Of a stretch of 64,000 bases of DNA, positions 1 through 51,990 are shown one piece after another. The position numbers were made by a program, and so were the translations under genes. A model generated the notes under the pieces. That model made no database searches and was not told where the DNA came from. It saw only the letters and a program-made list of their open reading frames with translations. Within the stretch, counting starts at the first letter, position 1, and every line of letters starts with the position of its first letter. Where the stretch lies: IMG/VR virus record IMGVR_UViG_3300009104_001210, positions 1 through 64,000 of that record. The stretch is one strand, 5' to 3'.

Positions 1-615
1 GGAACAGTTAACGCAAGTGGTGGTACATTTACGGGTAATGTTGATGTAGATGGAACACTTACTGCTGGAACTGCTAAATTTGGTGAGAATGTTGCAAGTA
101 CTAATGATGGTCTTTGGTTAGACGCTGACAATTATTGGTACGATAGTGGAGTTATGAAAGCTACATCAGGTACTGTCGGTGGTTGGACTATGACGGATAC
201 AAAATTACAAAACGCTACAAACCTTTTAACATTGGATTCACAGAATCCCAAGATATACGTTGGAAGTAGTGGTGGTAGTTCTACAAGTTTATTTCTTTCT
301 GGAGATGGTCTTTATAGAATATGGATTGGTGGCACAGCCTCAGGATCTGCCCCATTCAGAGTACATAGGGATGGTACATTAACTGCAACTGGTGTAGATA
401 TCACAGGAAATATTACAGCAACGACTGGTACATTTACAGGAACAGTTAACGCAAGCGGTGGAACATTCACAGGTAGAGTTAGAGCGGGAGATGCATATTT
501 TGGAGTAGGTGCTGATGGAGGATCAAATGACGGCATTTATTTAAACTCTAACAATTATTGGTATGATACTGGAACTATAAAAGCACAAGATGGAACAATT
601 GGTGGATTTACACTT
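1..615 (+). repeat. Internal repeat in tail fibre, ~438 nt (146 aa) period
   Basis: GTVNASGGTFTG at 1-36 recurs at 439-474. Both copies are followed by NDG(L/I)(W/Y)L...NYWYD(S/T)G..KA..GT(V/I)GG(W/F)T. Confidence 0.8.
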
Positions 616-1851
616 GGAAGTTCTAAATTAACTACTACAGGAGGAGCTAACGATCAATCTACAATTGGATTTGGTATATCTACTCCAGAATCTAAACTTC
701 ATGTTATTCAGGATGCTACTGATAGTGATACATTCACAATTGGTTCAACACCATCTTGGGAATGTAAAGATGGAAAAACTGCTTGGGCTGCGAGAATTGG
801 TGTAGATCCATATACAGGCGGAACAGCAAACAATTTTTATCAAGGTGCAATCGGTATGTTAGGTATTAAAGATTCATATCGAATACGAAATTTTGGTCTG
901 TACATGGAAACCATACAGGGTCAAAATAAAGGATGGGCTGGCAGTGATATAGATGTTAGTGGTTCTTATGGTTACGGAGTACAATTTAGTTTTGCTTCAT
1001 CTAAAGTTCAATATGGAGTAAGATCAATTCAAGCGTTTGGACCTGGCCAAGGTACTGCAGGATCTGCTACGGGTGAAATTATGCATATTGGAGCATTGTA
1101 TGATCAGGGAGATGGTTTAGATGTTCAAAGTAACACCCGCACATGGACTACAAGTGGTGGATTAATGCAGAGGGGAGTACAAATCGTCTGTAAGGGAAAC
1201 TATGATGTAGCTATAACATCACACCCAACTAATGCTTCGAATGCAATGAGGGATCTAAGTTATGTATCGGCTTTATCTTTGAATAATTTGCGTACTGGTA
1301 CTAATGGTCAATCAGCTGGACATGGTATTTTTGCTACTGGCTCACAATGGAAACATTTTATTGGTGCATCCACGTTAATTGGAGATCCTTCAGATGGAAA
1401 TAATAAAACACCTTCTTATACGTTAGATGTAAGGGGAGATATACGAGCAACAGGTAACATTACAGCATATTCTGATATTAGAGATAAAGAAAATATAGAA
1501 ACCATTTCTGGGTCTCTTGGTATAATTAATGATATTAGAGGAGTTAAGTTTGATTGGAATGAAGATTATAAATTTGAACACAGAGATAGGAATAAAGGTT
1601 CTGACCGATATATAAAAGCGCTTGCATCAGGATCAGCACCTATGTTAGATCCAAACTTAGAGGGAAGACAAATTGGCGTCATCGCTCAGGAAATAGAGTC
1701 GGTACTACCAGAATTGGTGTTTGAGGATGATAGGGGACGTAAAAATGTATCATATTCAAACTTGACAGCGGTTTTGATAGAGGCTGTTAAGGAACAACAA
1801 GAACAAATCGAAGAATTGAAACAAGAAATAAAGGAGATAAAAGATGCCTGA
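1..1851 (+). CDS. Tail fibre/spike protein with C-terminal peptidase S74 intramolecular chaperone (5' end outside window)
   Basis: Frame 1 is open from base 1 (GTVNASGGTFTG...). G/T/S-rich beta-repeat sequence. C-terminus YSDIRDKENI...GVKFDW...IGVIAQEIE.VLPELV...VSYSNLTAVLIEAVKEQQEQIEELK is the S74 signature plus coiled coil. Confidence 0.88.
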   Translation, partial: GTVNASGGTFTGNVDVDGTLTAGTAKFGENVASTNDGLWLDADNYWYDSGVMKATSGTVGGWTMTDTKLQNATNLLTLDSQNPKIYVGSSGGSSTSLFLSGDGLYRIWIGGTASGSAPFRVHRDGTLTATGVDITGNITATTGTFTGTVNASGGTFTGRVRAGDAYFGVGADGGSNDGIYLNSNNYWYDTGTIKAQDGTIGGFTLGSSKLTTTGGANDQSTIGFGISTPESKLHVIQDATDSDTFTIGSTPSWECKDGKTAWAARIGVDPYTGGTANNFYQGAIGMLGIKDSYRIRNFGLYMETIQGQNKGWAGSDIDVSGSYGYGVQFSFASSKVQYGVRSIQAFGPGQGTAGSATGEIMHIGALYDQGDGLDVQSNTRTWTTSGGLMQRGVQIVCKGNYDVAITSHPTNASNAMRDLSYVSALSLNNLRTGTNGQSAGHGIFATGSQWKHFIGASTLIGDPSDGNNKTPSYTLDVRGDIRATGNITAYSDIRDKENIETISGSLGIINDIRGVKFDWNEDYKFEHRDRNKGSDRYIKALASGSAPMLDPNLEGRQIGVIAQEIESVLPELVFEDDRGRKNVSYSNLTAVLIEAVKEQQEQIEELKQEIKEIKDA

Positions 1852-2014
1852 AGAAACACCCGTCGTTAAATGTGATTGCCCAGAATGTTCGGATACTTGT
1901 AAAAGAGATTATCCATGCCAAAGTAATGGTTGTGATTGTGATTGTTGTTGTCATGCTTCTGAATCTGGTTATTACACCATAACAGATAAAATGAAAGAAA
2001 AGGCTAATGGCTAG
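1844..2014 (+). CDS. Small Cys-rich protein (56 aa, 10 Cys), metallothionein-like or RiPP-precursor-like; not in the ORF track
   Basis: AAGGAG at 1831-1836 and ATG at 1844. Translation MPEETPVVKCDCPECSDTCKRDYPCQSNGCDCDCCCHASESGYYTITDKMKEKANG*. Overlaps both neighbours by 8 nt and fills the gap between them. Confidence 0.8.
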   Translation: MPEETPVVKCDCPECSDTCKRDYPCQSNGCDCDCCCHASESGYYTITDKMKEKANG

Positions 2015-2975
2015 AAGTAATGGAGATACTTTAGGATTAGGAGAAATGGGGTATGCAACCGGCGATAGCGCCAATACTACCACAACGGTAAGTATGCAGG
2101 ATACTTCAGGAGGAACATCTACAGTTTCATTTGATGATTTTGGAATTGATGCTTGTACTAATCCAACAGCCAATGATAGTAATGCTTTACATCCAGAAGA
2201 TACTGCTGAAACTTATACTGCAAATTTTACATCTGCAGGTTCACTTTTTTTATCTAAAATAGGAAATCAAACTCGTAATTTTACTTGGTCTATTTCCCCA
2301 GATGTCGGAGCATTTACATCAGCTGATGTAGGTGCGATATATACAGCACCATTAGTATCTTCAGATACAGCTGCAACTATATCATATAAATTTCATGATT
2401 CGTTTAATGATCACGCAACAGATTATAATACAAATAAATCAATAAGTATAACTATTACAGATACATATGGAGCAGGATGCTTTTCTTTAGATACTAAAAT
2501 TTTGTTATCTGATGGAACGGAAAAAGAAATACAAGATTTAGATATGTCTGATAAGTTAATGGGGATGAAAATGCCAGGTATGCCAACAAAAGGAAAATCA
2601 GCTGATGATTGGCATACCTATGCAAGTTGGACTACAAGCTCTATTGATTTATTTGAAACTTGTGAAGTTGAAATAGAAAGTTTGTGGTTTGATTATTTTG
2701 AAAGTTATTATAAGATTACTACAGAAGAAGATAAAGTTTTAACTGTAACATATGAACACCCTCTTTTTATATTGAGAGAAGGAATTTATCAATGGACACA
2801 TGCTCAAACTTTACAAGAAACAGATAAACTTGTAAATTATAAAAAAGAAGTAGTATCAATAACCAATATAGAGTTTAGAGATGAAGAACTTGAAACTTGT
2901 AATGTTGATGTTGAACCCGAAGACGTTTATTTTGCAGAACATTTTTTAGTGCATAATACTTTTCATGATAAATAG
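2007..2975 (+). CDS. Virion-associated-type protein with C-terminal Hint (intein-like) domain ending HN-T
   Basis: C158 (GAG-CFSLDTKILLSDG), block B VTYEHP, block F/G CNVDVEPEDVYFAEHFLVHN317, then TFHDK*. N-terminal part is S/T/D/G-rich and paralogous to 4029..5144. Confidence 0.85.
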   Translation: MARSNGDTLGLGEMGYATGDSANTTTTVSMQDTSGGTSTVSFDDFGIDACTNPTANDSNALHPEDTAETYTANFTSAGSLFLSKIGNQTRNFTWSISPDVGAFTSADVGAIYTAPLVSSDTAATISYKFHDSFNDHATDYNTNKSISITITDTYGAGCFSLDTKILLSDGTEKEIQDLDMSDKLMGMKMPGMPTKGKSADDWHTYASWTTSSIDLFETCEVEIESLWFDYFESYYKITTEEDKVLTVTYEHPLFILREGIYQWTHAQTLQETDKLVNYKKEVVSITNIEFRDEELETCNVDVEPEDVYFAEHFLVHNTFHDK

Positions 2976-2987
2976 GGATAGTATCAT

Positions 2988-3992
2988 ATGAGTTATGATG
3001 TTTATTATAGTACAGGTGGTGGTTCACTTATTATGGGGGGATCTGATGTATGGGTTAATTATTGGTTACAAAATATAGCACCAAAATTAAAACGACCATC
3101 TAAGTTATTAATTCATAGAGCACCAAATTCAATTGTAGAATTTGATTCACCAATTGAAGTTGTTTGGCAAAATGAACCTGAAGTATTTAAAAAAGTATTA
3201 GGAGAAGCTGAAAGAATTCATATTTTACATGGTTATTATCATCCTAAAAAAGAAATAATGGATAATTTGGATAAAATTTATTCTAATATCTTACACGTAA
3301 CAGTAGAAAAATCTTTACGAGCAGGTGTTTATTTAGGATTAAAAAAGTTGAAACATTTTGCTGCAAATATATCTTATGAAAAAGAAATATTAAAAGCATC
3401 TAAAAATAATATATGGATTGGAGTAGATGATACAACATATCATAAAGATAATGATATAATTGATATTCCAAATTTTTATGAATTTAAGAGAAAAAAAGAT
3501 GTGGTTATGAATGATAGAGTTGGATTTTTAGCTAGAATGGAAACAAGAAAAGCACCACACTTTATAAACGATATAGATTCTTGCATGCTTACAGATATAA
3601 GTGATGTTCAATGGTGGAGAGATAATTTAGAATTTCAATGGAATAAAACAAAAGTATTTCAATTTCAATATAAAAATTTACAAAAGTTTTTAGAAAGGGA
3701 TGATTGGGGAATATCACATTCAGCTCACGTATATGAACCATTTGGCTATTCTATATTTGAAGCAATTGATTATGGTAAGTTACCAATATTAGCAGCTGAT
3801 TGGTTATTTGGTAAGTTAGAGTATCCTTTTAGAGCAGCAAATAAACAAGAATTTGAAAATACACATTCTCAAATTTGTAAACTGAGTGAAAAAGAAAGAC
3901 AGTATTGGTTATTAAAGTTAAGAGCTTATTTATCAAGATATGATAATAAAGATGAATGGATCAACAAATATTTGGAAATATACAATTCTTGA
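2988..3992 (+). CDS. GT-B glycosyltransferase, GT4-like
   Basis: N-terminal GGSDVW loop. C-terminal EPFGYSIFEA (E-x7-E) followed by GKLPIL. Confidence 0.7.
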   Translation: MSYDVYYSTGGGSLIMGGSDVWVNYWLQNIAPKLKRPSKLLIHRAPNSIVEFDSPIEVVWQNEPEVFKKVLGEAERIHILHGYYHPKKEIMDNLDKIYSNILHVTVEKSLRAGVYLGLKKLKHFAANISYEKEILKASKNNIWIGVDDTTYHKDNDIIDIPNFYEFKRKKDVVMNDRVGFLARMETRKAPHFINDIDSCMLTDISDVQWWRDNLEFQWNKTKVFQFQYKNLQKFLERDDWGISHSAHVYEPFGYSIFEAIDYGKLPILAADWLFGKLEYPFRAANKQEFENTHSQICKLSEKERQYWLLKLRAYLSRYDNKDEWINKYLEIYNS

Positions 3993-4000
3993 TATTTATA
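3993..4000 (+). promoter_or_regulatory. TATTTATA intergenic motif (putative phage promoter)
   Basis: Exact motif in the 36-nt gap upstream of 4029. Recurs in every gap of 30 nt or more. Confidence 0.55.
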
Positions 4001-4028
4001 ATTGATAAACTATATATAGGAATGTTTA

Positions 4029-5144
4029 ATGGCAACAGATGCAAATCAAGATTTATCGTTAGGAAAACTGAGAAGAGCGGTAGATGGAAATGACTCATAT
4101 ACAGCAGAATCTAAATTAGGAGAAGATGCTGGCGGCACTACTTCTGCAGATTCAGATGTAGGAATGTCCAATTTTTCTATTTCAGCAGTTAGTTCAACTC
4201 TTTCTGGAAGTAAACACCAAGATGAAGGTACAGCTGAAACCGTAACAATGGAATTTTCAGATGCAGGTTCAAGGTTTATTTCACGAATAGCTGGTCGTTC
4301 TGAGAACTTTACTTGGGCAAAAAACAACGCCGTTGGTTCAGGAACTTATACAATAGAATCTGGAGATTATACGGCGACGGGAACAGCAGGTGCTATTTCT
4401 AGTGTAGATACAGCAAATACAGTAGGTGATGGTGTTAGGGGAACATTTCATGCTGCACATACAGGAGATTGGCGAGTAGGAATTAGTGCTTCATTTCATG
4501 AAGATGGACAATCAGATGGATATAATGATCACGCAACAAGATATAATACTGCTATAAAGAAAAAAACTCAAGTAGAAGACGTATATAATAGTGTTGCTAT
4601 AACTTGTTTTACACCTGATACTGAAATGCTTATGGCAGATGGAACATCTAAACAGATACAAGATGTACTTATTGGTGATGAGATTGTTGCTATGACATTA
4701 CCAAACGATGTAGAAGATTTTAAAGATTATAGTGTTGATAGTATAGATGGATTAGAACAAACTACAGCAAAAGTTGTTAATATGTTCTTTGATTTTGCTG
4801 ATGAGTATTATATTATTAATGGTGATATTAAAGTAACAGGAGAACATCCTATTTTTATTCAGGTTCCTGAAGGATTTTATGTAGATGTTGAAGATTCTTC
4901 TGAATTTTATTGTTGGGAATATGTTGTTAACTTGAAAGTTGGTCAAATTATGTATAATAAGAATTTGAATGAAGTTCCAATTGATGTTATTGAGAAAGTA
5001 GAAAAAGAAATAGAAATTGTAAATGTAGATGTTGATGGTCCAAATACATATTTTGCAGGTGGAGTATTGGTTCATAATAAAGGAGCAGCATCAGTATCAG
5101 ATACAGGTGATGGAATAGGACACTCATTTACTGAAGACGGATAG
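4029..5144 (+). CDS. Virion-associated-type protein with C-terminal Hint (BIL-A-like) domain ending HN-K
   Basis: C193 (AIT-CFTPDTEMLMADG), VTGEHP, VNVDVDGPNTYFAGGVLVHN350 plus a 21-aa tail. Shares AGS.F(L/I)S(K/R)I......NFTW and NDHAT.YNT with 2007..2975. Confidence 0.85.
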   Translation: MATDANQDLSLGKLRRAVDGNDSYTAESKLGEDAGGTTSADSDVGMSNFSISAVSSTLSGSKHQDEGTAETVTMEFSDAGSRFISRIAGRSENFTWAKNNAVGSGTYTIESGDYTATGTAGAISSVDTANTVGDGVRGTFHAAHTGDWRVGISASFHEDGQSDGYNDHATRYNTAIKKKTQVEDVYNSVAITCFTPDTEMLMADGTSKQIQDVLIGDEIVAMTLPNDVEDFKDYSVDSIDGLEQTTAKVVNMFFDFADEYYIINGDIKVTGEHPIFIQVPEGFYVDVEDSSEFYCWEYVVNLKVGQIMYNKNLNEVPIDVIEKVEKEIEIVNVDVDGPNTYFAGGVLVHNKGAASVSDTGDGIGHSFTEDG

Positions 5145-5180
5145 GAGCAATAAATCCTTTAATTTGAGAAGAGTTTTTTA

Positions 5181-5188
5181 TATTTATA
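5181..5188 (+). promoter_or_regulatory. TATTTATA intergenic motif (putative promoter of the first island operon)
   Basis: Exact motif 21 nt upstream of ATG 5210. Confidence 0.55.
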
Positions 5189-5209
5189 ACTGAGTAATAG
5201 CAGGTTTTA

Positions 5210-6793
5210 ATGGATAATAGGTTAGCAATAATTGTTCCTTATCGAGATAGAAGAAAACAGTTAGATGTTTTCATTCCGCATATGGATTCCTTTTTTCAAA
5301 ATAAAGGAATTGATTATCAGATAATAGTAGCAGAACAAAGAGATGATAGGCCTTTTAACAGAGGTAAATTATGTAACGCCGTGTTTGATTTAATTAAAGA
5401 CGACTTTGATTATTTTTGCTTTCACGACGTAGACTTGTTGCCATTAACAGATGATTGTGATTATTCTTATGTAGATAAACCAACTCATGTAGCAGCTATC
5501 ATTGACGATGTATATCTACCATATGAAGAGTTTATTGGTGGAGTATTCTTAATCAATAAAGAGCATTTCGAACAAATTAATGGATTTTCTGATGAATATT
5601 GGGGATGGGGATATGAAGATAATGATTTGTTAGAAAGAATGAGAAAAAATGATATTCCATTAAATACAGTTATAGATATTTCTTCTGTTTCAAAAAATCC
5701 AAGATATTCTTTTGATCAAGTACATTTACACAATAATTTTAAAACTAAGATATTAAATACTATTAAACTACATGGTGATATTTGTATAGAAGTACCAACA
5801 TCGGATTCTATAGATAATTTAACTAATGGTAGTTTTTCTTTTTCTATTTGGGCAAAACCAACAATAGAAGATTATGAACAATTTATATTATCAAGACCAC
5901 CAATTGGGTTAGGAATGTTATATACAGTAGAAGGTGAATTTAAATTTTTATTGTGGGATGAGAATGATGAAGCTCATGTTATAAAAGATTATAGAATACC
6001 AAATGAATGGTATCATTTATGTATGACATATGATACTAAAACTAAAATGTTTAGTGCATATATTAATGGTTCTTTAATAAAAACGATTAAAGTTGAATCA
6101 TTAAAAAACTTTAGTGGAGAGTGGTTTTATATTGGAGCAGATTCTTCTAATGAAAATAATTTTAGAGGAAGTGTTAGTGAAGCAACATTATGGAATGTTT
6201 GTTTAGATGAAAACGAAACTAAAAAATTATATTTTGAACAAGTAACTAATTTGATACATAGTCCAATAATGTGGCATAAGTTTGATAAGTGTTACGGAAG
6301 TTATATATTAGGTACAGAAGTTAATAGTGGAAATTTTCAAAAAATAAAAGTATATATTATGCTAGATGAATCTACTTATGAAAATAACGGAACAGTTAAA
6401 AGTTTTTCTAAGGAAATAAAACCTCTTCAATCGAAAGCTACAATAAATCCTATATTAGAAAAGATAATATTGGGTACTACTATAAAGATACCTAATAGAA
6501 GATATGGAATTTATAAAACTTTAGTTAATGATAAAACATGGAAAAGAGGAAGACAGGTTACAGATAAAGATTATGTTCATAGTAGAGTAAGACATTATAA
6601 GTCTACTGATGGAAAGGATATTGTAACTAAATTAAAATCATATGATCCAGATATTTTAGAAAATTCAGATATATTTTTTGATGAAGTTAGAGAAGGATCA
6701 GTGATTAATGTTGGTTTAAATAAATTAGATTATAAAGTTAGAAACAGACAAGAATTTGAAGATATTCATGAATGGATAGAAATAATAACATAG
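5210..6793 (+). CDS. GT7 (beta-1,4-galactosyltransferase-like) glycosyltransferase with inserted LamG domain
   Basis: LAIIVPYRDR, FNRGKLCN, FHDVD, GWGYEDND. LamG (FSFSIWAKP...WYHLCMTYD...YINGSL...YIGA...FRGSVSEATLWN). GT7 C-terminus resumes at IPNRRYG and ends GLNKLDY. Confidence 0.85.
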   Translation: MDNRLAIIVPYRDRRKQLDVFIPHMDSFFQNKGIDYQIIVAEQRDDRPFNRGKLCNAVFDLIKDDFDYFCFHDVDLLPLTDDCDYSYVDKPTHVAAIIDDVYLPYEEFIGGVFLINKEHFEQINGFSDEYWGWGYEDNDLLERMRKNDIPLNTVIDISSVSKNPRYSFDQVHLHNNFKTKILNTIKLHGDICIEVPTSDSIDNLTNGSFSFSIWAKPTIEDYEQFILSRPPIGLGMLYTVEGEFKFLLWDENDEAHVIKDYRIPNEWYHLCMTYDTKTKMFSAYINGSLIKTIKVESLKNFSGEWFYIGADSSNENNFRGSVSEATLWNVCLDENETKKLYFEQVTNLIHSPIMWHKFDKCYGSYILGTEVNSGNFQKIKVYIMLDESTYENNGTVKSFSKEIKPLQSKATINPILEKIILGTTIKIPNRRYGIYKTLVNDKTWKRGRQVTDKDYVHSRVRHYKSTDGKDIVTKLKSYDPDILENSDIFFDEVREGSVINVGLNKLDYKVRNRQEFEDIHEWIEIIT

Positions 6794-6801
6794 GAGTTGA
6801 T

Positions 6802-6981
6802 ATGATAAGTATTTTTAACGATGAAAAGAAAGTAATTGAGTTAGAAAGAATAGCGGATTGGTTACATTCTGCAACTTCAACTATGAAATTTAATAAAAGT
6901 ATGTCTCAATTTGTTATTTGGACAAATTTATTAAAATTAATGTTTACTAATGAAGTAGATAAGGAGAATACAAATGGCTAA
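6802..6981 (+). CDS. Hypothetical protein (59 aa)
   Basis: AGGAG RBS before ATG 6802 (track start 6772). Coupled to neighbours. Confidence 0.55.
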   Translation: MISIFNDEKKVIELERIADWLHSATSTMKFNKSMSQFVIWTNLLKLMFTNEVDKENTNG

Positions 6982-7186
6982 AACATTAGAAGAAAGAGGA
7001 GTAGATGCTTTAGAAAAGATATCTGAATCCTTACAAACTATAGAAGATGCCGTATTGGAGTTTGATGTTCCAGCATGGAGCGAAAGATTAGAATGGTATA
7101 TGAATGAATACTATGCTATTTTAAAAGCTAAAGTTGTTGGAAATCCAAATAGACCATCTCGTGATAGAGATGTAAATGAGTCATAA
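6974..7186 (+). CDS. Hypothetical protein (70 aa)
   Basis: AAGGAG RBS. Overlaps both neighbours. Confidence 0.65.
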   Translation: MAKTLEERGVDALEKISESLQTIEDAVLEFDVPAWSERLEWYMNEYYAILKAKVVGNPNRPSRDRDVNES

Positions 7187-8654
7187 TATAGGTCCACTCG
7201 GATTAAGATCACTTAATCCTAAGTTAGCAATAATAGTACCTTATAGAGATAGAAAGAAGCAGCTTGATAAATTTATAAAGCACATGACGAACTTCTTTCT
7301 AGATACGGATGTAAAGTATCATATATTTGTAATAGAACAAGAAGATGATAAACCATTTAATCAAGGAAAGTTATTAAATGTTGGGTTTTCTTTAGCAGAA
7401 CACGATTTTAATTATTTTTGTTTCCATGATGTAGATTTACTTCCCGAAAAGGATTGTGATTATTCGTATCCTGATGATAAACCATTACACTTAGGTGGGT
7501 TTACAAGTGAATATGATTACGAATTACAGTTTCAAGACTATTTTGGTGGAGTAACTTTGTTTAGAAAAGAAGATTATGAAGCAGCAAATGGTAGGTCAAA
7601 TAACTATTGGGGGTGGGGATTTGAAGATGATGATTTATTGTTTAGATGTAAACAAGCAGGACTTCCAATTGACACAAAGTTTTTTGGTGTAGCTAAAACA
7701 AACTGTTATTCTTATCTTGAGTTTGATGGATATGATGATTTTGTTGAAATAAAAGTTACAGATGAACTAAAAGAATTAACAAAAGATAGTTTCTCAGTAA
7801 CAGTTTCTATACATCCAGAATTACAACACCAAGTAGAAGATATTCCATACGATGAACATTTTGCTTTTTCTATACCTGGCTATCATTGTGGTTTATCTTA
7901 TACAAGTCATAGAAGATATAAAGCAGATATATTTGATTCTAATATAAAATCACAAGCAGTTCTTACAGATATAGAAACAGAATATTTTAATCATTTAACT
8001 ATGGTTTATAATAAGGAAATAGATAGATTTTTATTTTATCAAAATGGAAAATTAGTAGATTCTACAAGAATTGAAAAATTATATGATTATACTAAAGAAG
8101 AGTATTTATATTTAGGATGTGCTAATCCAGCAAATAAAGAATATTCATATAACTTTAAAGGTAAGATAGTAGAAGTTGCTATTTGGAATAACGCATTGGA
8201 TGAGGGAGATGTGAGTTCTTTATATAAAAATAATTTTGTAAGAAGTTTGACTACAAACTTTTTTGATTATAGAAGTTCGGAAAGCTTAGTTTTATATTAT
8301 GATTTTAAACATATAGTTGGAAATCAAGTTTTTGATAATAGTGGATGGTATAATAATGGTGTTATACATGGAGCAACTAACGGTAGTAAAATAGGCAAGA
8401 GAGGAAGATGGTTAACTGTACCTCATAGAAGATATGGTAGATATACTTCACAACAACATTCAAAATCAGCATGGGCAGCAGAAGGTTTACATTGGTTATA
8501 TTCAGAAACAAGAGATAATCAAACAAGATTTTTTAATAAAGTTAAAACAGGTTATGAAGATTGGCATATTGATGGATTAAATACTTTAAAATATTCATTA
8601 AATTCAAGAGAAGAGTTATCAGATAAAGCAACTATATTTAAAGTGGAATTATAA
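7176..8654 (+). CDS. GT7 glycosyltransferase with inserted LamG domain
   Basis: IIVPYRDR, FNQGKLLNVG, FHDVD, YFGGV, GWGFEDDD. LamG insert. Resumes TVPHRRYGRY...DGLNTLKY. Confidence 0.88.
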   Translation: MSHNIGPLGLRSLNPKLAIIVPYRDRKKQLDKFIKHMTNFFLDTDVKYHIFVIEQEDDKPFNQGKLLNVGFSLAEHDFNYFCFHDVDLLPEKDCDYSYPDDKPLHLGGFTSEYDYELQFQDYFGGVTLFRKEDYEAANGRSNNYWGWGFEDDDLLFRCKQAGLPIDTKFFGVAKTNCYSYLEFDGYDDFVEIKVTDELKELTKDSFSVTVSIHPELQHQVEDIPYDEHFAFSIPGYHCGLSYTSHRRYKADIFDSNIKSQAVLTDIETEYFNHLTMVYNKEIDRFLFYQNGKLVDSTRIEKLYDYTKEEYLYLGCANPANKEYSYNFKGKIVEVAIWNNALDEGDVSSLYKNNFVRSLTTNFFDYRSSESLVLYYDFKHIVGNQVFDNSGWYNNGVIHGATNGSKIGKRGRWLTVPHRRYGRYTSQQHSKSAWAAEGLHWLYSETRDNQTRFFNKVKTGYEDWHIDGLNTLKYSLNSREELSDKATIFKVEL

Positions 8655-10607: not shown

Positions 10608-12070
10608 AAAGGAAAGGAGCAACAAAAAAATGGAAGGAAAAGAAAAAACTTCATGGAGAAATGTATGTAGATGCATTTGATACTGGAATTGAATATTATA
10701 GTTCTAATATAGGAAAAGAATTGAAATATTTAAAAGATGAATGGAATATGTCATATTTGGGAGTGATATGGGGATATGCAAAATCATTTAAAAAAGAAAC
10801 TTGGGATTGGTTAATAGAAAATACTTTTATATTTCCAGATGTAGCAAGATTAAAGAAAGATATATCAGATAGTTTACATCCAGAACTTTTTAATTTTTCA
10901 TATGAAGTGATAAAAAAATTAAATAAACATTTTATTACGATTATTGAAGATACTGAAGGTCATTGTATACAACTTAAAGTACCTGAAAAAGTACATAAAG
11001 TTTGTGAAAAAACAGAAATTCCTGTAGAAAAAATATTAATAATTACTAATGATATTAATGCTAAATCTGATTATGATAATTGGTTTGAAAAAATAAAAAA
11101 ATATGAAACAAAACTTAATATTGTAAGTTATCCTTGTTTTGTAAATAGAATGGTAGGGGATTTTTATGAAAAAATAGCAAAAAGTTTATATAAAGAACAT
11201 TCAAGTACTAGATTTGGTCGTACTACACTTGAATCGGGTATAACTATTCCTATTATTGATATTAAAGAACACATTTATAAACCGAAACGCAGATTAAAAC
11301 CAAATAAGAAATTTATATGTCTTATGGGAAGAGGTACAGATGATAGAAGTTTTTTTTGGGAATATTTTCAAAATGGTGTTAATGTTGATATTTTAAATAC
11401 AATGATTAAACGAATTAAATCCAGAAAATTATCTACAAAATGGGGGAAAGTTGTTGATCCAAAAACAAATTATATTTCTTTTGATGCTTTTAACTATGCA
11501 GTTTTTAAAACAAAACATAAGAAAGAGAACAAAGAAATAGCAAATTTATTACAAGAAAGTGGTCATATATCTTATGTTGCAGAAGATGTAATTTTAGAAA
11601 ATAGTTATGAAGATATAGATACTGGAAATTCCTTAACGCCCAGAGAAAATATTTTGTATGGTAGGTCAGGACCATTAACAGATAAGTTAGAATACTATTA
11701 TGAAGATTCTTATTTTTCTATAGTACCAGAATGTGTAAGTGGAACAATGTTATCAGAAAAGTGGGTAAAACCTATATATCATGGACACCCATTTATGATT
11801 TTATCGCCACTTGGGTGTGGAATATTAAAGAAGATGAGAGAGTGGGGATTTGAAACTTTTCCAGAAATATTTGATGAATCATATGATGAAATGGATAATA
11901 GATTAGATAGAGTGTCTCATATAGAAAATGAAATTTTAAGATTGTGTAAAATGGATATGAAAGAATTACAAAAGTTGCGTGATTCTGTATATGAAAAACT
12001 TGTCCATAATCAGAAAACTTTATTTGATATGAAATTAACACAAAAACCCTTTACGGATATATTAAAATGA
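10604..12070 (+). CDS. GT10-like GT-B protein, paralogue 2
   Basis: KKFICLMGR; YFSIVPEC...LSEKWVKP..HGHPFM...GFETFPEIFDESYD. ATGA overlap at 10604-10607. Confidence 0.55.
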   Translation: MKRKGATKKWKEKKKLHGEMYVDAFDTGIEYYSSNIGKELKYLKDEWNMSYLGVIWGYAKSFKKETWDWLIENTFIFPDVARLKKDISDSLHPELFNFSYEVIKKLNKHFITIIEDTEGHCIQLKVPEKVHKVCEKTEIPVEKILIITNDINAKSDYDNWFEKIKKYETKLNIVSYPCFVNRMVGDFYEKIAKSLYKEHSSTRFGRTTLESGITIPIIDIKEHIYKPKRRLKPNKKFICLMGRGTDDRSFFWEYFQNGVNVDILNTMIKRIKSRKLSTKWGKVVDPKTNYISFDAFNYAVFKTKHKKENKEIANLLQESGHISYVAEDVILENSYEDIDTGNSLTPRENILYGRSGPLTDKLEYYYEDSYFSIVPECVSGTMLSEKWVKPIYHGHPFMILSPLGCGILKKMREWGFETFPEIFDESYDEMDNRLDRVSHIENEILRLCKMDMKELQKLRDSVYEKLVHNQKTLFDMKLTQKPFTDILK

Positions 12071-13479
12071 AAGAACATTACTTAGGAGTATGTATTCCTT
12101 ATAGAGATAACGGAGATGGTGTAAGAAAAAAACATTTAGATACATTAGTTCCTTATCTTACTAAGTTTCTCGATGAAAGGAATATAAAACATAAAATGTT
12201 TATTGGTCATCAAGTAGATGATAAGTTATTTAATCGTAGTGGTACAAAGAATGCCGCATTTTTAGCAGCTAAAGAAGAGGGTTGTGATTATGTAGCATTT
12301 CATGATGTAGATATGTTGCCCGAAGACGGAGCAGATTACAGCTATCCCGAAGACAACCCAATCCACATAGCAACCTATCTATCTCAATGGGATTACAATC
12401 TCAGAGATGTAGAATACTTTGGTGGAGTTGTGTTGTTTACTATAGAGCAGTTTGAAGCAGTCAATGGATATCATACCAATTATTGGGGTTGGGGTATGGA
12501 AGATGATGACTTGTTTTGGAGATGTCATTTAAAGGGAATGACAAACGATAGATATGTTGAAGGACCAGGTGAAACAAATATTTGTACACTAAATGGTGAA
12601 TCAGATTTTATACAAATACCTTCTTCTAGAACGCTTCATAGTATTGGTAGTAGAAGTCATGAAATTGAGTTATTAGTAAGACCACATCAGTTTGCTGAAA
12701 AACAATATTTGATAGGAGATGAAAATAAAAAATATATTGAATATCCTATTTTTATTAGATATGGTTGGGATTATAGTATAAGTTATAATAATTCAAAAGC
12801 TATATCAAGTATGATTTGGACTTGGAAAAATGATTTATTATATAATTGGGCTAAAAGATATCCGAATGAATGGACATTAGTTAATGTAAAAGTTGATGAT
12901 GTTAAAAGAGAAATTAGATTGTTAATTAATGGAGAAGAAACAGATGCACGACATGGAACAGGAACAGAATCACCATTAGTATATAATATGCCACTTAAAA
13001 GATATGGTGGGTCTCCGATTTATCTTGGTAAAGCAAATAGTAATAATGCAAAACAACAAAATTTTATGGGAGATATAGCACATATTAAAATAAAAAATAA
13101 TAGAGATAAAGTAGTTTTACATTATGACTTTGATGAAGTTATAGATAATATAGTTATTGATAAGAGTGGTAATGATAATAATGGAATTATGAATGGTTGT
13201 GAGATAAAAAAGGAAGTTGTTGATAAAATACCATTTACAGTTGTACCACATAGAAGGTTTAGTAAATTTGAATGTTTATTTCATGAAGATGAAGGTATTG
13301 TTAAAGGAAATTTTGTGAGTGATACTACACCTAGAAATGAAAGAATATATAAGTTAAAGATGCAACAGAAAAAAATAGATATAGATACAGATGAGTATGG
13401 AGTAAAAAATATGGAATATGAATTAGTTAGTATAGAAGATTGTTATAATTATCATAAAATGGTTAATGTAAAGTTCTAA
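12067..13479 (+). CDS. GT7 glycosyltransferase with inserted LamG domain
   Basis: VCIPYRD, FNRSGTKN, FHDVD, YFGGV, GWGMEDDD. LamG insert. Resumes VVPHRRFSKF...GVKNMEY. Confidence 0.88.
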   Translation: MKEHYLGVCIPYRDNGDGVRKKHLDTLVPYLTKFLDERNIKHKMFIGHQVDDKLFNRSGTKNAAFLAAKEEGCDYVAFHDVDMLPEDGADYSYPEDNPIHIATYLSQWDYNLRDVEYFGGVVLFTIEQFEAVNGYHTNYWGWGMEDDDLFWRCHLKGMTNDRYVEGPGETNICTLNGESDFIQIPSSRTLHSIGSRSHEIELLVRPHQFAEKQYLIGDENKKYIEYPIFIRYGWDYSISYNNSKAISSMIWTWKNDLLYNWAKRYPNEWTLVNVKVDDVKREIRLLINGEETDARHGTGTESPLVYNMPLKRYGGSPIYLGKANSNNAKQQNFMGDIAHIKIKNNRDKVVLHYDFDEVIDNIVIDKSGNDNNGIMNGCEIKKEVVDKIPFTVVPHRRFSKFECLFHEDEGIVKGNFVSDTTPRNERIYKLKMQQKKIDIDTDEYGVKNMEYELVSIEDCYNYHKMVNVKF

Positions 13480-15008
13480 TGAGTAATTACGAACATGAAA
13501 GAATAAAGAAAGTTTTACCTCAAATAGAGGCAAAGACTTCACCAACATTTTGTCTTGCTAAATGGCACCATGTTACTATCTATCTACATTTAGGTGAAAC
13601 TCATAGTTGTTATCACCCACAACCACACGCAATTTCTTTAGAAGAGTTAAAAAACAATCCTTCAGCATTACATAATACCGTACAAAAGAAGTTTGAAAGA
13701 AAGCAGATGTTAGAGGGTAAGAAACCTGAAGGATGTACTTATTGTTGGAATGTAGAAGCATTAGGTGAAGATTATATAAGTGATAGGAAACAAAGAACTC
13801 TTTCTATATATGAGGGAGATAAGAGTAGATTAGATGATATTATAAATAATCCCTGGGATATGAATGTTAATCCTGAATATATCGAACTTTCTTTTGGTAA
13901 TCAATGTAATTTTAAATGTGGTTATTGTCATCCAAGATATAGTTCAAGATTTTATGATGAAATTAAAGAATATGGTTCTTATTACAAAAATTATACAGGC
14001 AAATATGATGTTGAGTGGTTTGAAGATAGGTTATATAAAAATGATGAAGATAATCCATATGTAAAGGCTTGGTGGAAATGGTGGCCAGAAGTTTCTAAGA
14101 CATTAAATATATTGAGAATTACAGGTGGTGAACCAACAATTCATGGTAGTACTTATAGATTATTAGATGAGATTAATAAAAACCCTATGCCAAATCTTGA
14201 ATTGAATATAAATTCTAATCTTGGTGCAAATCCAAAACTTTTTGATAAATTTGTAGAGAAGTTAAAACCAATTATAGAAGAAAAGAAAGTTAGAGAGTTC
14301 AAGTTATTTACTTCTATAGATAGCTGGGATAAACCTAAAGCTGAATATATGAGATATGGTTTAGATTTAGATTTATTTGAAAGAAATTTTAATAAGTATT
14401 TAACTGAAATTGATAATTCAAAATTATCTTTAATGATAACATTTAATAACTTATGTGTTTCTAACTTTGATTCTTTATTAGAACAAATATTAGTGTGGAG
14501 AGAAAAATATAATACTAAAGCAGCTAGAGAAAAAGGAAATGTTAATCAACCTATACCTTTACAGAGAATTCAAATAGATACACCATATTTAAAAGAACCG
14601 CCACATTATGATATGAATATTTTACCTAAAGAAGAGTTTACACATTATATGGATGATCATTTAAAGTTTATGATTGACAATCAAGATGATGAGGATAATA
14701 CAAAATTTAGAACTATAGAAGTTGAAAAATTTAGAAGGGTTGTAGATTATTTTAAAAGTTCAGAGATAGAACATAGACCATATCCAACCGTTGAGGAATA
14801 TATTAAGAAAGGAAGAAGTGATTTTTATAATTTTTTTAAGGAACACGATAATAGAAGGGGAACAAATTTTTTAAAATCTTTTCCCGAATACACAGAGTTT
14901 TTTAATTCTTGTAAGAGTGAAATAATTAATACTGCTAGAAGTTCTAGGTTAGCTGAAAAAAGAATGAGATTATTAGAGAGAAGGAGAAAAAATGATAAAA
15001 CTAATTAA
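13479..15008 (+). CDS. Radical SAM protein with N-terminal twitch-like Fe-S domain
   Basis: FCLAKW...HSCYHP...GCTYCW precedes NQCNFKCGYC (CxxxCxxC). ITGGEP, NSNL. Confidence 0.88.
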   Translation: MSNYEHERIKKVLPQIEAKTSPTFCLAKWHHVTIYLHLGETHSCYHPQPHAISLEELKNNPSALHNTVQKKFERKQMLEGKKPEGCTYCWNVEALGEDYISDRKQRTLSIYEGDKSRLDDIINNPWDMNVNPEYIELSFGNQCNFKCGYCHPRYSSRFYDEIKEYGSYYKNYTGKYDVEWFEDRLYKNDEDNPYVKAWWKWWPEVSKTLNILRITGGEPTIHGSTYRLLDEINKNPMPNLELNINSNLGANPKLFDKFVEKLKPIIEEKKVREFKLFTSIDSWDKPKAEYMRYGLDLDLFERNFNKYLTEIDNSKLSLMITFNNLCVSNFDSLLEQILVWREKYNTKAAREKGNVNQPIPLQRIQIDTPYLKEPPHYDMNILPKEEFTHYMDDHLKFMIDNQDDEDNTKFRTIEVEKFRRVVDYFKSSEIEHRPYPTVEEYIKKGRSDFYNFFKEHDNRRGTNFLKSFPEYTEFFNSCKSEIINTARSSRLAEKRMRLLERRRKNDKTN

Positions 15009-15096
15009 ACGATTGATTACTAAAATAAAATTAGAAATAAGATATCGTAAAAAAATTAAAGAACTTAAAAAAAGAGATCCTTTTATATACAAATAA
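14992..15096 (+). CDS. Small basic peptide (34 aa) ending RDPFIYK; not in the ORF track
   Basis: AAGGAG at 14981-14986, ATG 14992. MIKLIKRLITKIKLEIRYRKKIKELKKRDPFIYK*. Stop TAA directly abuts ATG 15097. Confidence 0.75.
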   Translation: MIKLIKRLITKIKLEIRYRKKIKELKKRDPFIYK

Positions 15097-16332
15097 ATGA
15101 GTATTAGAGAAAAATATAAAAAGTTAAAAGGATCTAAGGTTTTTTGTATGATGCCCTGGATACATACACACGTGTGGCCAAGTGGTAAAGCATTTCCTTG
15201 TTGTATGTCGGATAGTACAGTTGAATATGGTAATTTAAATGATAATAGTTTAGCAGAGATTTGGAATGATGAAAAGTATAAACAACTTCGTTTAAATATG
15301 TTAAATGAAAAAGAAAGTTTAGAATGTAATAGATGTTATGAAATGGAGAAATCCAATGTGTGGACTTTACGAAAAATGGTAAATCAGACATATGATAAGC
15401 ATTGGGATAGAGTAGAGACAACACAAGATGATGGTACGGTAGAAGAAGTAAATATGGGATATATGGATATTAGAGTTTCTAATATATGTAATTTCAGATG
15501 TAGAACTTGTGGTCCAGAGTTGAGTAGTGCTTGGCATGAAGATCATATTAAACTTTATGGAGAAAAACCACAATGGCCTAAGATAATGAATATAGCAAAT
15601 AATGAAAGGTTTTGGAAAGATTTACAACCATTATTATTTACGGTAGAGGAAGCGTGTTGGGCAGGTGGAGAACCAATTATTACAGAAGAACATTATAAGA
15701 TATTAGATTTTTGGGTTGAAAATAACATGAAAGATGTTAGATTAAGATATACAACAAATTTTAGTAATCTTTATTTTAAGAAAAAAAGTATATTAGAGTA
15801 TTGGAATTCTTTTAATGATGTTAGAATAGCTGCAAGTCTTGATGCTATGGGTAAAAGAGGTGAGTTGATTAGGGCAGGAATGGAATGGAATGTTATAGAA
15901 GACAATCGTAGACAAATGATAAAAGAATGTCCTGATGTATATTTTGAAATAACACCTACAGTTAGTATTATGAATGTGTATCATCTACCAGACTTTCATA
16001 AGGATTGGGTAGATAAAGAACTTTTAGAACCAAATAATATAAGAGTAAATATATTAACACATCCAGAAGATTATAGAATACAAATTATACCAAAAGAAGA
16101 AAGAAAGAAATTTATAGACAAGTATAATGAACATATAAAATGGATTGATGATAATTTTGGTGAAGGTGTTGCTAAAAATGGATTTATGTCTATATTAGAT
16201 TTTTTAGAACAAGGTAATTATGAAGATAGTATATCTAATTTTATTAATAGAAATAAAGCATTAGATAAAACAAGAGAAGAATCTTTATTTGATGTTTGTA
16301 CTGAATTAAAGTTTTTAAAAGATTATGAATAG
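15097..16332 (+). CDS. Radical SAM protein with N-terminal twitch domain
   Basis: FCMMPW...GKAFPCC...ECNRCY; NICNFRCRTC; AGGEP; YTTN; SLDA. Confidence 0.9.
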   Translation: MSIREKYKKLKGSKVFCMMPWIHTHVWPSGKAFPCCMSDSTVEYGNLNDNSLAEIWNDEKYKQLRLNMLNEKESLECNRCYEMEKSNVWTLRKMVNQTYDKHWDRVETTQDDGTVEEVNMGYMDIRVSNICNFRCRTCGPELSSAWHEDHIKLYGEKPQWPKIMNIANNERFWKDLQPLLFTVEEACWAGGEPIITEEHYKILDFWVENNMKDVRLRYTTNFSNLYFKKKSILEYWNSFNDVRIAASLDAMGKRGELIRAGMEWNVIEDNRRQMIKECPDVYFEITPTVSIMNVYHLPDFHKDWVDKELLEPNNIRVNILTHPEDYRIQIIPKEERKKFIDKYNEHIKWIDDNFGEGVAKNGFMSILDFLEQGNYEDSISNFINRNKALDKTREESLFDVCTELKFLKDYE

Positions 16333-17047
16333 AGAATTTATATTTTATAAGAATAAACACAAGGATAAAACTGCTATTTTATTTGCAAGTGGTCCAACCT
16401 TAGAATTATATAACTTTGATTCTTCTAAGGATTGGGTTAGAGTAGGGGTTAATTCTGTAATTTATAAAGAAGATTTAAAATTAGATTATTTTTTTGGTGG
16501 ACAAAATGTAAAGAGAGAAAGTTGGAATCATCCACACCATGATTTAGAAATTAAATCACCAATATTTAATCAGTTGGATAAAAGAAAAGATGAAATGGAA
16601 ATTTTTCTATTAAATAAAATAGTGTATGATATACAAAATAAACCAACGTGGGTAGATAAAGCTAATGATGAACTTTTTACAAATGAAGAAATTCAAATGT
16701 TAGATGCAATTTCTTTCGAATGTCATACGGAAAGAGGAGTATCAGCATTTCAAATTGATATAAATACTAATCCATTATATGATAGAAGAATTGTTTTTCC
16801 TGCATTACAATTTTTACTTTATACAGGAGTTAAAGAAATATATTTGGTTGGATGTGATTGTGGATATGGTGCTTCTTATTTAGAACCAAATAAACGATGG
16901 GATCATGATATAAAAAATAAAACAGAAGGAACTATTTCATTTTGGAAAGAATTTAAAGAGTTTGTTGATATAAATTTTAAAGATGTAAAAATAATATCTA
17001 TTAATCCAAAGGGATTAAAAGGAATGTTTCAGGATGTTTATGAATAA
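16325..17047 (+). CDS. DUF115/Maf (MptE-like) domain protein, putative sugar transferase
   Basis: KTAILFASGPTL, VGVNS, PALQFLLYTGVKEIYLVGCDC. Confidence 0.65.
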   Translation: MNREFIFYKNKHKDKTAILFASGPTLELYNFDSSKDWVRVGVNSVIYKEDLKLDYFFGGQNVKRESWNHPHHDLEIKSPIFNQLDKRKDEMEIFLLNKIVYDIQNKPTWVDKANDELFTNEEIQMLDAISFECHTERGVSAFQIDINTNPLYDRRIVFPALQFLLYTGVKEIYLVGCDCGYGASYLEPNKRWDHDIKNKTEGTISFWKEFKEFVDINFKDVKIISINPKGLKGMFQDVYE

Positions 17048-51989: not shown

Positions 51990-51990
51990 T

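What the first reader, a model, noticed from the sequence alone, without database searches (positions are those of the whole stretch)
2007..5144. Two paralogous tail-linked proteins with complete Hint domains but different +1 residues (HN-Thr vs HN-Lys)
Seen: both have Cys1, TxxH block B, block F and terminal HN (C158-N317 and C193-N350). Their N-terminal regions share AGS.F.S.I...NFTW and NDHAT.YNT, and only 5 or 21 residues follow the Hint. Established: Thr+1 permits canonical splicing, while Lys+1 (BIL-A type) favours cleavage or thioester transfer to an outside nucleophile, as in hedgehog cholesterolysis and BIL-ubiquitin-like conjugation. Inference: these may be self-activating tags that leave a C-terminal thioester. 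That could couple the protein to a virion lysine or to an amine/hydroxyl product of the adjacent island, giving a covalent attachment route for the glycan system.
Basis: partly seen in the sequence, partly recalled or inferred. Interest (0 to 1): 0.8.

Follow-up and report, generated by a model that had tools for sequence, protein, structure and literature searches.

The report
Phage tail proteins with self-cutting domains
Two neighbouring genes of an uncultured marine T4-like phage each encode a small antibody-like surface module followed by an intein-like self-cutting (Hint) domain. They belong to a large unstudied family that nearly always keeps a lysine just after the domain and a glycosyltransferase gene next door, which points to an unusual lysine-directed protein ligation that has not been tested.

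Summary
ORF A (2007-2975) and ORF B (4029-5144) are full-length paralogs (32% identity, E 2e-45). Each is an Ig-like N-module plus a complete Hint domain (C158-N317; C193-N350), followed by 5 and 21 residues. By profile and by predicted fold the Hint is closest to BIL domains (Tetrahymena BUBL BIL2, Clostridium thermocellum BIL), not to canonical inteins.

The family picture changes the reading. Lys+1-Gly+2 is the family rule: 30 of 30 cluster representatives. Thr+1 of ORF A is a one-off, since its orthologs have K, E or V. Every tail after HN still holds a Lys.

Relatives carry fn3 or LamG-like domains after the Hint. Hint-less relatives either stop exactly at the -1 site or join the same domains directly, as intein-free alleles do.

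A GT4-like gene (2988-3992) sits directly upstream of 42 of 42 Lys+1 Hint genes. It is absent beside six Hint-less relatives.

Most likely this is a BIL-type self-excising domain whose thioester is resolved by an amine of the Lys-bearing C-flank. Conjugation to another protein or to a glycan is not excluded. I rate it a new variant of a known kind, untested biochemically.

The parts
154..1851 (+). Tail fibre protein (565 aa) with a C-terminal Peptidase_S74 intramolecular chaperone; context that places the cassette in the tail module
   Evidence: Pfam PF13884 E 1.2e-11; many PHROG tail-fibre families. Homologous fibre C-ends lie upstream of the cassette in related loci.
2007..2975 (+). ORF A, 322 aa: Ig-like N-module + BIL-type Hint + 5-residue tail (A-type lineage)
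2007..2477 (+). ORF A N-module (aa 1-157), ending ...TDTYGAG at the -1 site
   Evidence: Alignments A2/A3. Hint-less relatives stop at the equivalent position.
2478..2957 (+). ORF A Hint domain (Cys158 to Asn317), block B TYEH, terminal HN
2958..2972 (+). ORF A C-flank TFHDK: Thr+1 is not conserved; the terminal Lys is
   Evidence: Ortholog tails are KGV, KGA, EVGK, ETGK, EEDGK and VHEK
2988..3992 (+). GT-B fold, GT4-like glycosyltransferase (334 aa, E-x7-E motif at E250-E258): the obligate partner of the Hint genes
   Evidence: Atlas structure TM 0.67-0.78 to GT4/Glycos_transf_1 clusters. Weak PF00534 hit. Directly upstream of 42/42 Lys+1 Hint genes. Directly downstream of A-type or short Hint genes. 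Absent beside Hint-less relatives.
4029..5144 (+). ORF B, 371 aa: Ig-like N-module + BIL-type Hint + 21-residue tail (B-type lineage, Lys+1)
4029..4604 (+). ORF B N-module (aa 1-192): short helical N-segment plus beta-sandwich, ending ...NSVAIT
   Evidence: AF2 model pTM 0.75. Only weak Ig-like or phage-surface fold matches.
4605..5078 (+). ORF B Hint domain (Cys193 to Asn350), block B TGEH, terminal HN
5079..5141 (+). ORF B C-flank (21 aa) starting Lys351-Gly352; a shortened version of the 26-30 residue tail of its closest relatives
1844..2014 (+). 56-aa Cys-rich ORF that bridges the fibre gene and ORF A; coding status uncertain, listed as possible context only
   Evidence: No Pfam hit. Other loci carry unrelated small ORFs at this position.

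Best explanation
ORF A and ORF B are precursors of small Ig-like tail-module (fibre or decoration) proteins. Each carries a BIL-type Hint domain that removes itself after translation. Inferred steps: (1) Cys1 makes an N-to-S acyl shift, which puts the N-module on a thioester. (2) An amine of the protein's own short C-flank resolves the thioester: either the conserved Lys side chain, or the alpha-amine freed by step 3. (3) The terminal Asn cyclises and detaches the Hint. The outcome is the N-module ending at the -1 site, bare or capped by the short Lys peptide. In relatives with fn3 or LamG-like C-exteins the outcome is the N-module joined to that domain. The GT4-like partner most likely glycosylates the product, for example its Ser/Thr-rich junction. 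The fold, the catalytic residues, the family conservation, the domain architectures and the gene linkage are shown. The chemistry, the identity of the nucleophile and the glycosylation are inferred.
For: Hint fold and BIL affinity. Catalytic residues across the family: Cys1 40/40, HN 30/31 and Lys+1 30/30 among 50%-identity cluster representatives; Cys1 207/207, HN 206/207, Lys+1 200/207 and Gly+2 193/207 in the redundant set. Every HN-ended tail contains Lys; where +1 is not Lys the last residue is Lys (TFHDK, EVGK/ETGK/EEDGK, VHEK), although Lys makes up only 3.9% of family residues. Phage NCTB tail-module proteins also end in Hint plus short Lys tails. Hint-less relatives are complete genes that stop at the -1 site (L052, P0192, P0195, P0219). 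Other Hint-less relatives join the N-module directly to the same C-domains that serve as C-exteins elsewhere: P0221 versus P0152, E 7e-16 and 7e-8; P0293 versus P0147, E 1.5e-9. Literature: BIL domains self-cleave at both ends and can ligate without a +1 nucleophile (PMC7765530, PMC7664689); BIL2 forms a Lys isopeptide (PMC8616854). Tail context.
Against: There is no biochemical or proteomic evidence. A cis Lys+1 nucleophile is not an established mechanism. Characterised BIL domains give mostly cleavage products (PMC7664689). For tails of 3-21 residues a ligated product has no obvious use, yet HN and Lys are kept. ORF A itself lacks Lys+1. The strict GT4 co-occurrence is not explained by self-excision alone. 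The C-flank is modelled with very low confidence (pLDDT 26-36), so its geometry could not be assessed. The patchy occurrence of the Hint on the N-module tree would also fit a selfish element.
Confidence: 0.45

Rival explanations
1. The Hint is a self-activating tag. The thioester at the N-module's C-terminus is attacked by an outside nucleophile, either a lysine of another virion protein or an amine or hydroxyl of a glycan made with the GT4 partner or the island. This attaches the N-module covalently, in the manner of hedgehog or BUBL.
For: The nearest solved relative, BIL2, conjugates a ubiquitin-like domain to lysines of other proteins (PMC8616854). The Hint is kept even when the C-extein is 0-5 residues, including the 232-aa variants in L033/L044 that end with the Hint itself (...CHQ...CRQ). 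In those only the N-terminal thioester can matter. If bare release were the only goal, a stop codon at the Cys1 position would do the job. GT4 and Hint co-occur strictly, 42/42 against 0/6.
Against: The invariant HN and Lys+1-Gly+2 are not needed for hedgehog-type transfer. Hint-less 'pre-spliced' architectures point to cis joining. A GT-B enzyme transfers sugars to acceptors and is not expected to deliver a nucleophile to a thioester. No acceptor protein was identified. Many Hint loci lack the large glycan island.
Confidence: 0.2
2. Cleavage only. The Hint is a removable C-terminal maturation domain, acting as a folding or assembly aid or as a timer, much like the S74 chaperone of the neighbouring fibre. 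The thioester is simply hydrolysed and the tail is discarded.
For: Characterised BIL domains give predominantly N- and C-cleaved products (PMC7664689). Standalone Hint-less N-modules show that a free C-terminus at the -1 site is functional. Self-removing C-terminal domains are common in tail fibres.
Against: It does not explain the near-invariant Lys+1-Gly+2 or the Lys kept in every short tail. It does not explain the conserved HN where the tail is only 3-9 residues. It does not explain relatives whose C-exteins are whole fn3 or LamG domains that are fused directly in Hint-less homologs.
Confidence: 0.2
3. A selfish or decaying mini-intein-like insertion with no benefit to the phage. The catalytic residues are kept only because failure to excise would harm the host protein.
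For: The Hint is patchily distributed on the N-module tree: starred branches force at least 7 changes, though some of these are frameshifted fragments. The insertion lies at an inter-domain linker and intein-free alleles exist. One lineage has tandem Hints (P0146, P0234).
Against: There is no homing endonuclease. The Hint is present in all 42 GT4-linked loci across about 30% identity. In short-tail members a single nonsense mutation would remove it at no cost, yet it persists with intact motifs.
Confidence: 0.1
4. The Hint domains are catalytically dead structural modules that stay on the mature protein.
For: Pfam Hint-clan scores are below threshold and no activity data exist.
Against: Cys1, T-x-x-H and the terminal HN are among the very few invariant columns of a family with 40% mean column identity.
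Confidence: 0.05

Closest known systems
A-type bacterial intein-like (BIL) domains (e.g. Clostridium thermocellum BIL, PDB 2lwy; related PT-HINT domains)
   Same: Cys1, block B T-x-x-H, terminal His-Asn, no Cys/Ser/Thr at +1. Located in variable surface or secreted proteins rather than in conserved enzymes, and without a homing endonuclease. Among the best sequence and fold matches.
   Different: Found in the phage tail module. The N-extein is a specific Ig-like module. Lys+1-Gly+2 is nearly invariant. A GT4-like gene is an obligate neighbour. No toxin or adhesin cargo. Pfam PT-HINT is hit only below threshold.
BIL2 of the Tetrahymena thermophila BUBL1 polyubiquitin-like locus (PDB 6y75, 6tmm)
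   Same: Top hit by fold (E 9e-11) and by profile (1.8e-8). A Hint that resolves its thioester on a lysine amine to give an isopeptide (PMC8616854). Flexible Gly-rich -1 flank in several family members.
   Different: The N-extein is not ubiquitin-like. The organism and the biological setting differ. Here the candidate lysine lies at +1 or within a tail of 3-30 residues of the same chain. No activity has been shown.
Canonical class 1 mini-inteins (e.g. gp41-1, DnaB)
   Same: Same fold and blocks A, B, F and G. Intein-free alleles with directly joined flanks exist for long-C-extein relatives. ORF A happens to have Thr+1.
   Different: The +1 nucleophile is absent in 30/30 representatives and is not conserved in the ORF A lineage. 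The insertion lies at a domain linker or at the C-terminus, not in a conserved active site. PDB intein matches are weaker (E 1e-4 or worse by profile).
Hedgehog/Hog C-terminal autoprocessing domain
   Same: The layout of cargo domain plus C-terminal Hint with almost nothing after it. The thioester could be passed to a non-protein nucleophile.
   Different: There is no sterol-recognition region. A terminal HN and a Lys-bearing C-flank are conserved here, which hedgehog lacks. The fold match is weaker (1at0, E 1.2e-6).
Peptidase_S74 intramolecular chaperone of tail fibres and endosialidases
   Same: A self-removing C-terminal domain on phage tail proteins. One is encoded by the gene just upstream.
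   Different: Unrelated fold and chemistry: serine-lysine autoproteolysis with no thioester.

Membership tests
Hint (hedgehog/intein) superfamily | Hint fold | tested here: met
   The AF2 model of ORF B has 54 PDB matches at E<=1e-3; every listed match is a Hint domain (BIL, intein, hedgehog or Vint).
Hint (hedgehog/intein) superfamily | N-terminal nucleophile and block B T-x-x-H | tested here: met
   Cys158 with T248..H251 in ORF A; Cys193 with T270..H273 in ORF B. These columns are invariant in A2/A4. TIGR01445 is above its cutoff for ORF A.
Canonical class 1 intein | Cys/Ser/Thr nucleophile at +1, conserved | tested here: not met
   ORF B has Lys, as do 30/30 family representatives. ORF A has Thr but its orthologs have K, E or V.
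Canonical class 1 intein | Terminal His-Asn for Asn cyclisation | tested here: met
   HN in 206/207 sequences and 30/31 representatives.
Canonical class 1 intein | Inserted in a host protein whose intein-free alleles join the flanks directly | tested here: inconclusive
   True for relatives with long C-exteins (P0221/P0152, P0293/P0147). For ORF A and ORF B the C-extein is only 5 or 21 residues, and Hint-less relatives simply stop at -1.
Canonical class 1 intein | Protein splicing activity | not testable with these tools
   Needs expression and mass spectrometry.
A-type BIL domain | Cys1 plus C-terminal His-Asn with a non-nucleophilic +1 residue | tested here: met
   ORF B and the family as a whole. 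ORF A is an exception at +1 in this one sequence.
A-type BIL domain | Closer in sequence and structure to BIL domains than to inteins | tested here: met
   Profile against PDB: BIL2 1.8e-8 and 2lwy 8e-8, versus 1e-4 or worse for inteins. The top five Foldseek hits are BIL domains.
A-type BIL domain | Sits in variable, non-conserved surface or secreted proteins, without a homing endonuclease | tested here: met
   The C-exteins vary (none, short tails, fn3, LamG-like, other). The Hint is about 155 residues with no endonuclease insert.
A-type BIL domain | N- and C-terminal autocleavage | not testable with these tools
   Inferred only from conserved residues.
BUBL-type BIL (isopeptide-forming) | Ubiquitin-like N-extein ending in Gly-Gly | tested here: not met
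   The N-extein is an Ig-like beta-sandwich. The -1 flank is Gly-rich only in some members.
BUBL-type BIL (isopeptide-forming) | Thioester transferred to a lysine epsilon-amine | not testable with these tools
   A Lys is kept in every C-flank, which fits this feature but does not prove it.
Hedgehog/Hog domain | Sterol-recognition region after the Hint; no C-terminal HN requirement | tested here: not met
   Only 5 or 21 residues follow the Hint, and HN is invariant.
PT-HINT (pre-toxin Hint) | Followed by a polymorphic toxin domain | tested here: not met
   There is no C-terminal toxin domain. The PF07591 hit is below threshold, 21.5 bits against 27.7.
GT4 / GT-B glycosyltransferase (partner gene 2988-3992) | GT-B fold with an E-x7-E motif | tested here: met
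   Atlas structural TM 0.67-0.78 to GT4 clusters. E250-x7-E258 lies among the conserved columns of A5. Sequence profiles alone fail: Pfam gives E 0.037 and the PDB profile search gives no hit.

The most novel reading that the evidence does not exclude
This could be a natural lysine-directed Hint ligase module used in phage virion assembly. The conserved Lys of the C-flank (Lys+1-Gly+2, or a terminal Lys) would take the N-module off the Cys1 thioester as an isopeptide. Asn cyclisation would then free the Hint, giving a branched join of two virion-surface domains or a capped module. The reaction would be functionally coupled to the always-adjacent GT4 glycosyltransferase, for example through glycosylation of the junction or of the product. 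That would be a fourth way of resolving an intein-type thioester, and the first found in a virus particle.
Probability: 0.25. Interest if true: 0.8.

Novelty: new variant of a known kind. Interest (0 to 1): 0.6.

Why it matters
Hint domains are the basis of inteins, hedgehog signalling and protein-ligation tools. A large environmental family keeps Lys, rather than Cys, Ser or Thr, at the C-junction. It comprises 869 close homologs of ORF B and 230 clusters (at 50% identity) that contain the N-module. If this Lys is the nucleophile, the family offers a natural system for nucleophile-independent or isopeptide-forming ligation. For phage biology it defines a conserved three-part cassette (Hint protein, GT4-like enzyme, Hint protein) in the tail module of abundant marine T4-like phages. 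The cassette probably bears on how surface modules are matured, joined or glycosylated. It also makes the question directly testable with two small proteins.

Tried and rejected
Megablast of 1-8000 against cultured phages gave no match. tblastn of ORF B against cultured phages found only Hint-level hits in phage NCTB and an Erwinia jumbo phage, so no cultured phage carries the family.

Pfam Hint-clan models are all below threshold. The PHROG hit (phrog_38766, 'virion structural protein') covers only the Hint part.

The N-module was modelled alone and searched against PDB and BFVD. Only weak generic Ig-like or phage-surface matches came back (E>1e-3), so no function could be assigned. An ESM Atlas search of the N-module gave scores of about 0.7, which is uninformative.

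The profile of the GT partner found nothing in PDB sequences or in Pfam. Only the Atlas structure search and the E-x7-E motif identify it.

The literature searches found no paper on Hint domains in phage tail proteins. Dassa et al. 2004 is not held in the library.

Ideas considered and rejected:
- NFTW as an N-glycosylation sequon. The Thr column varies (V, F, I, T) in relatives.
- The ENPG motif of B-type tails as a 2A-like skipping site. No Pro follows it, and ORF B ends before it.
- A recent tandem duplication of A and B. They fall in separate old clades, each with orthologs in other phages.
- The glycan island as the necessary partner. Many Hint loci lack it.
Full report
**What the window is.** The window is the first 64 kb of a 216-kb uncultured viral contig, IMGVR_UViG_3300009104_001210 (locus L006, 100% identity). 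All ORFs of 150 aa or more lie on the + strand and GC is about 29%. It encodes a T4-type portal and large terminase. The nearest cultured portals are those of Flavobacterium phage immuto (54%) and Microcystis phage Mel-JY01 (52%). The only hit in the prokaryote genome collection is a short contig binned as a Flavobacteriales MAG. That is a weak host clue.

**Checking the observation.** ORF A (2007-2975, 322 aa) and ORF B (4029-5144, 371 aa) are paralogous from end to end: 32% identity, E 2e-45.
- ORF A: Cys158, T248-x-x-H251, the block F/G stretch, HN317, then TFHDK.
- ORF B: Cys193, T270-x-x-H273, HN350, then 21 residues beginning KG.

Pfam Hint-clan hits are below threshold, but the assignment is secure on other grounds. 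TIGR01445 is above its cutoff for ORF A. A family profile hits BIL2 of Tetrahymena BUBL1 (1.8e-8) and the Clostridium thermocellum BIL domain (8e-8) in PDB sequences, while inteins reach only 1e-4 or worse. The AF2 model of ORF B (pLDDT 76) matches the same BIL structures best (9e-11 to 1.4e-9), then mini-inteins and hedgehog. The upstream gene is a tail fibre with an S74 chaperone.

**The family.** ORF B has 869 homologs at E<=1e-3 in the large protein collection, mostly from marine metagenomes. ORF A has 26. A profile of the N-module alone finds 230 clusters at 50% identity. Forty-seven viral contigs carry a relative. Aligning diverse members gives this architecture:
- an N-module of 160-200 residues with the motifs LSLGxLxxA, NF.W and GFNDHATNYN;
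- a Hint of about 155 residues;
- a variable C-flank.

The C-flank can be absent, a tail of 3-30 residues, an fn3-like domain of about 100 residues, a LamG-like domain of about 230 residues, or larger combinations. Modelled alone, the N-module is a short helical segment followed by a beta-sandwich (pTM 0.75). It gives only weak, generic Ig-like and phage-surface matches.

**The junction residues.** Among representatives of 50%-identity clusters, Cys1 is present in 40/40. The domain ends in HN in 30/31. The +1 residue is Lys in 30/30, mostly followed by Gly. In the redundant set the counts are 207/207, 206/207, 200/207 and 193/207.

ORF A is the only sequence with Thr+1. Its orthologs (37-44% identical) have K, E or V at +1 and tails of only 3-5 residues. 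Lys is the rule and the ORF A lineage has relaxed it.

Every tail that follows HN nevertheless contains a Lys. Where +1 is not Lys, the last residue is (TFHDK; EVGK, ETGK, EEDGK; VHEK), although Lys makes up only 3.9% of family residues. By my own rough estimate, taking these as three lineages, a chance terminal Lys in all three has a probability of about 6e-5. Phage NCTB, a cultured jumbo phage, has three tail-module proteins that end in a Hint plus a short Lys-bearing tail (HN-APVDQKH, HN-AVMVAKK, HN-KVD). They are annotated only as 'intein domain' proteins.

**Hint-less relatives.** Many complete genes encode the N-module without a Hint:
- Standalone proteins of about 160 residues stop exactly where Cys1 would be: L052:7995-8480, P0192, P0195.
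- Long fn3-repeat proteins end with the module: P0219, P0228, P0237.
- Some proteins join the module directly to a C-domain. Two of these C-domains are homologous to C-exteins of Hint-bearing members: P0221 versus P0152 (E 7e-16 for the N-module, 7e-8 for the C-domain) and P0293 versus P0147 (fn3, 1.5e-9).

The last pattern is the relation between intein-free and intein-containing alleles. It supports ligation of the flanks as the biologically relevant outcome where the C-extein is a domain. It also shows that a free C-terminus at the -1 site is functional where it is not.

**Gene context.** A 334-aa gene (2988-3992) lies between ORF A and ORF B. The Atlas holds a model of it with a GT-B fold (TM 0.67-0.78 to GT4/Glycos_transf_1 clusters). 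It carries an E-x7-E motif (E250-E258) among its conserved columns. Sequence profiles alone do not name it.

Its homolog lies within 100 bp upstream of the Lys+1 Hint gene in 41 of 41 loci that have at least 1 kb of upstream sequence, and also in the MAG contig. A-type genes (window, L007) and a 232-aa short variant (L033, L044) lie directly upstream of it. The conserved cassette is therefore an optional Hint protein, then GT4, then the Hint protein.

The GT4 gene is not directly upstream of the Hint-less genes in L052, L054, L059, L061, L062 and L064. L062 and L064 lie in the same sheath/tube synteny as Hint-bearing loci such as L016. The large GT7/LamG and radical-SAM island that follows in the window is present in only some Hint loci. 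The link is thus to the GT4 gene and not to the island. L052 and L053 place a Hint-less N-module gene directly next to a lysozyme that is 72% identical to window 51931-52473. This suggests that the roughly 48-kb island of the window is an insertion at that point.

**Evolution.** On a maximum-likelihood tree of N-modules, the A-type and B-type lineages are separate, well-supported clades with orthologs in other phages. The duplication is therefore old. Hint presence is patchy: starred branches force at least 7 changes. Several nested 'Hint-less' rows are frameshifted fragments (P0149, P0155, P0206) and were not removed.

**Mechanism.** The fold, the residues, the architectures and the gene linkage are shown. 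The rest is inferred from established Hint chemistry, as follows. Cys1 forms a thioester with the N-module. The terminal Asn cyclises. BIL domains that lack a +1 nucleophile mainly cleave, but they can ligate (PMC7765530, PMC7664689). BIL2 resolves its thioester on a lysine to form an isopeptide (PMC8616854).

I think the most likely course is self-excision in which an amine of the Lys-bearing C-flank takes the N-module off the thioester. For ORF A and ORF B this would leave the N-module bare or capped by a short peptide. In long-C-extein relatives it would leave two joined domains. The GT4 partner would probably glycosylate the product. My confidence in this whole account is about 0.45. My confidence that the Hint is catalytically active at all is about 0.85.

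**Rivals.**
It is favoured by the persistence of the Hint with vestigial or absent C-exteins and by the GT4 coupling. It is disfavoured by the conserved HN-Lys-Gly and by the pre-spliced alleles.
- Cleavage only, as a maturation domain (0.2).
- A selfish mini-intein-like element (0.1).
- A catalytically dead structural domain (0.05).

**Comparison with known systems and novelty.** The domain meets the tested features of an A-type BIL domain. It fails the canonical-intein test for a conserved +1 nucleophile, the hedgehog test for a sterol-recognition region, the PT-HINT test for toxin cargo and the BUBL test for a ubiquitin-like N-extein. My literature searches found no description of this family or of Hint domains in phage tail modules. 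I classify it as a new variant of a known kind. The unexplained points are the invariant Lys-Gly, the retention of HN with tails of only 3-9 residues, and the obligate GT4 neighbour. These are worth an experiment.

Noticed in passing
window 5210-51207: An island of about 46 kb for glycan and cofactor-type modification. It contains three GT7+LamG glycosyltransferase paralogs (5210-6793, 7176-8654, 12067-13479), an epimerase, several radical SAM/SPASM proteins (13479-20110), a B12-binding radical SAM (48023-49309) and a carbamoyltransferase (49735-51207). In related phages (L052, L053) the Hint-less N-module gene lies directly next to a lysozyme 72% identical to window 51931-52473, so the island looks like an insertion at that point.
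   Followed up: partly
window 1844-2014: A 56-aa ORF with 11 cysteines overlaps the end of the tail-fibre gene and the start of ORF A. It has no family hit. Other loci carry unrelated small ORFs (89 aa, 142 aa) at this position.
   Followed up: partly
L033:2313-3011 and L044:6028-6726: 232-aa variants at the ORF A position. They have only the N-terminal motif and about 80 residues before a Hint that ends the protein (...CRQ, ...CHQ) with no HN and no C-extein, a hedgehog-like layout.
   Followed up: partly
P0146, P0234 (metagenomic proteins): Two Hint domains in tandem. The second Cys1 comes right after HN-K of the first, and the second domain ends in HS-EI.
   Followed up: no
P0165, P0170: A roughly 150-residue insertion inside the N-module, upstream of a normal Hint with HN-KG.
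   Followed up: no
L027:1631-6802: A 1723-aa fibre-like protein upstream of the cassette has a 174-residue stretch 31% identical to ORF A (E 1e-17). I did not determine whether the stretch is the N-module or a Hint.
   Followed up: no
L057 (phage NCTB, LT598654.1 90443-102901): Three consecutive tail-module proteins of a cultured 258-kb phage end in Hint domains with Gly-rich -1 flanks and short Lys-containing tails. They are annotated only as 'intein domain' proteins.
   Followed up: partly
L065 (NZWA01000002.1) and window 58738-60561: The only hit in the prokaryote genome collection is an 8.9-kb contig binned as Flavobacteriales. The nearest cultured portal (54%) is from a Flavobacterium phage. 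Together these are a weak hint that the host is a marine flavobacterium.
   Followed up: partly
window 52977-56270: A 1097-aa protein with a cytidylyltransferase-like domain lies between the lysozyme and the terminase. It is otherwise unassigned.
   Followed up: no
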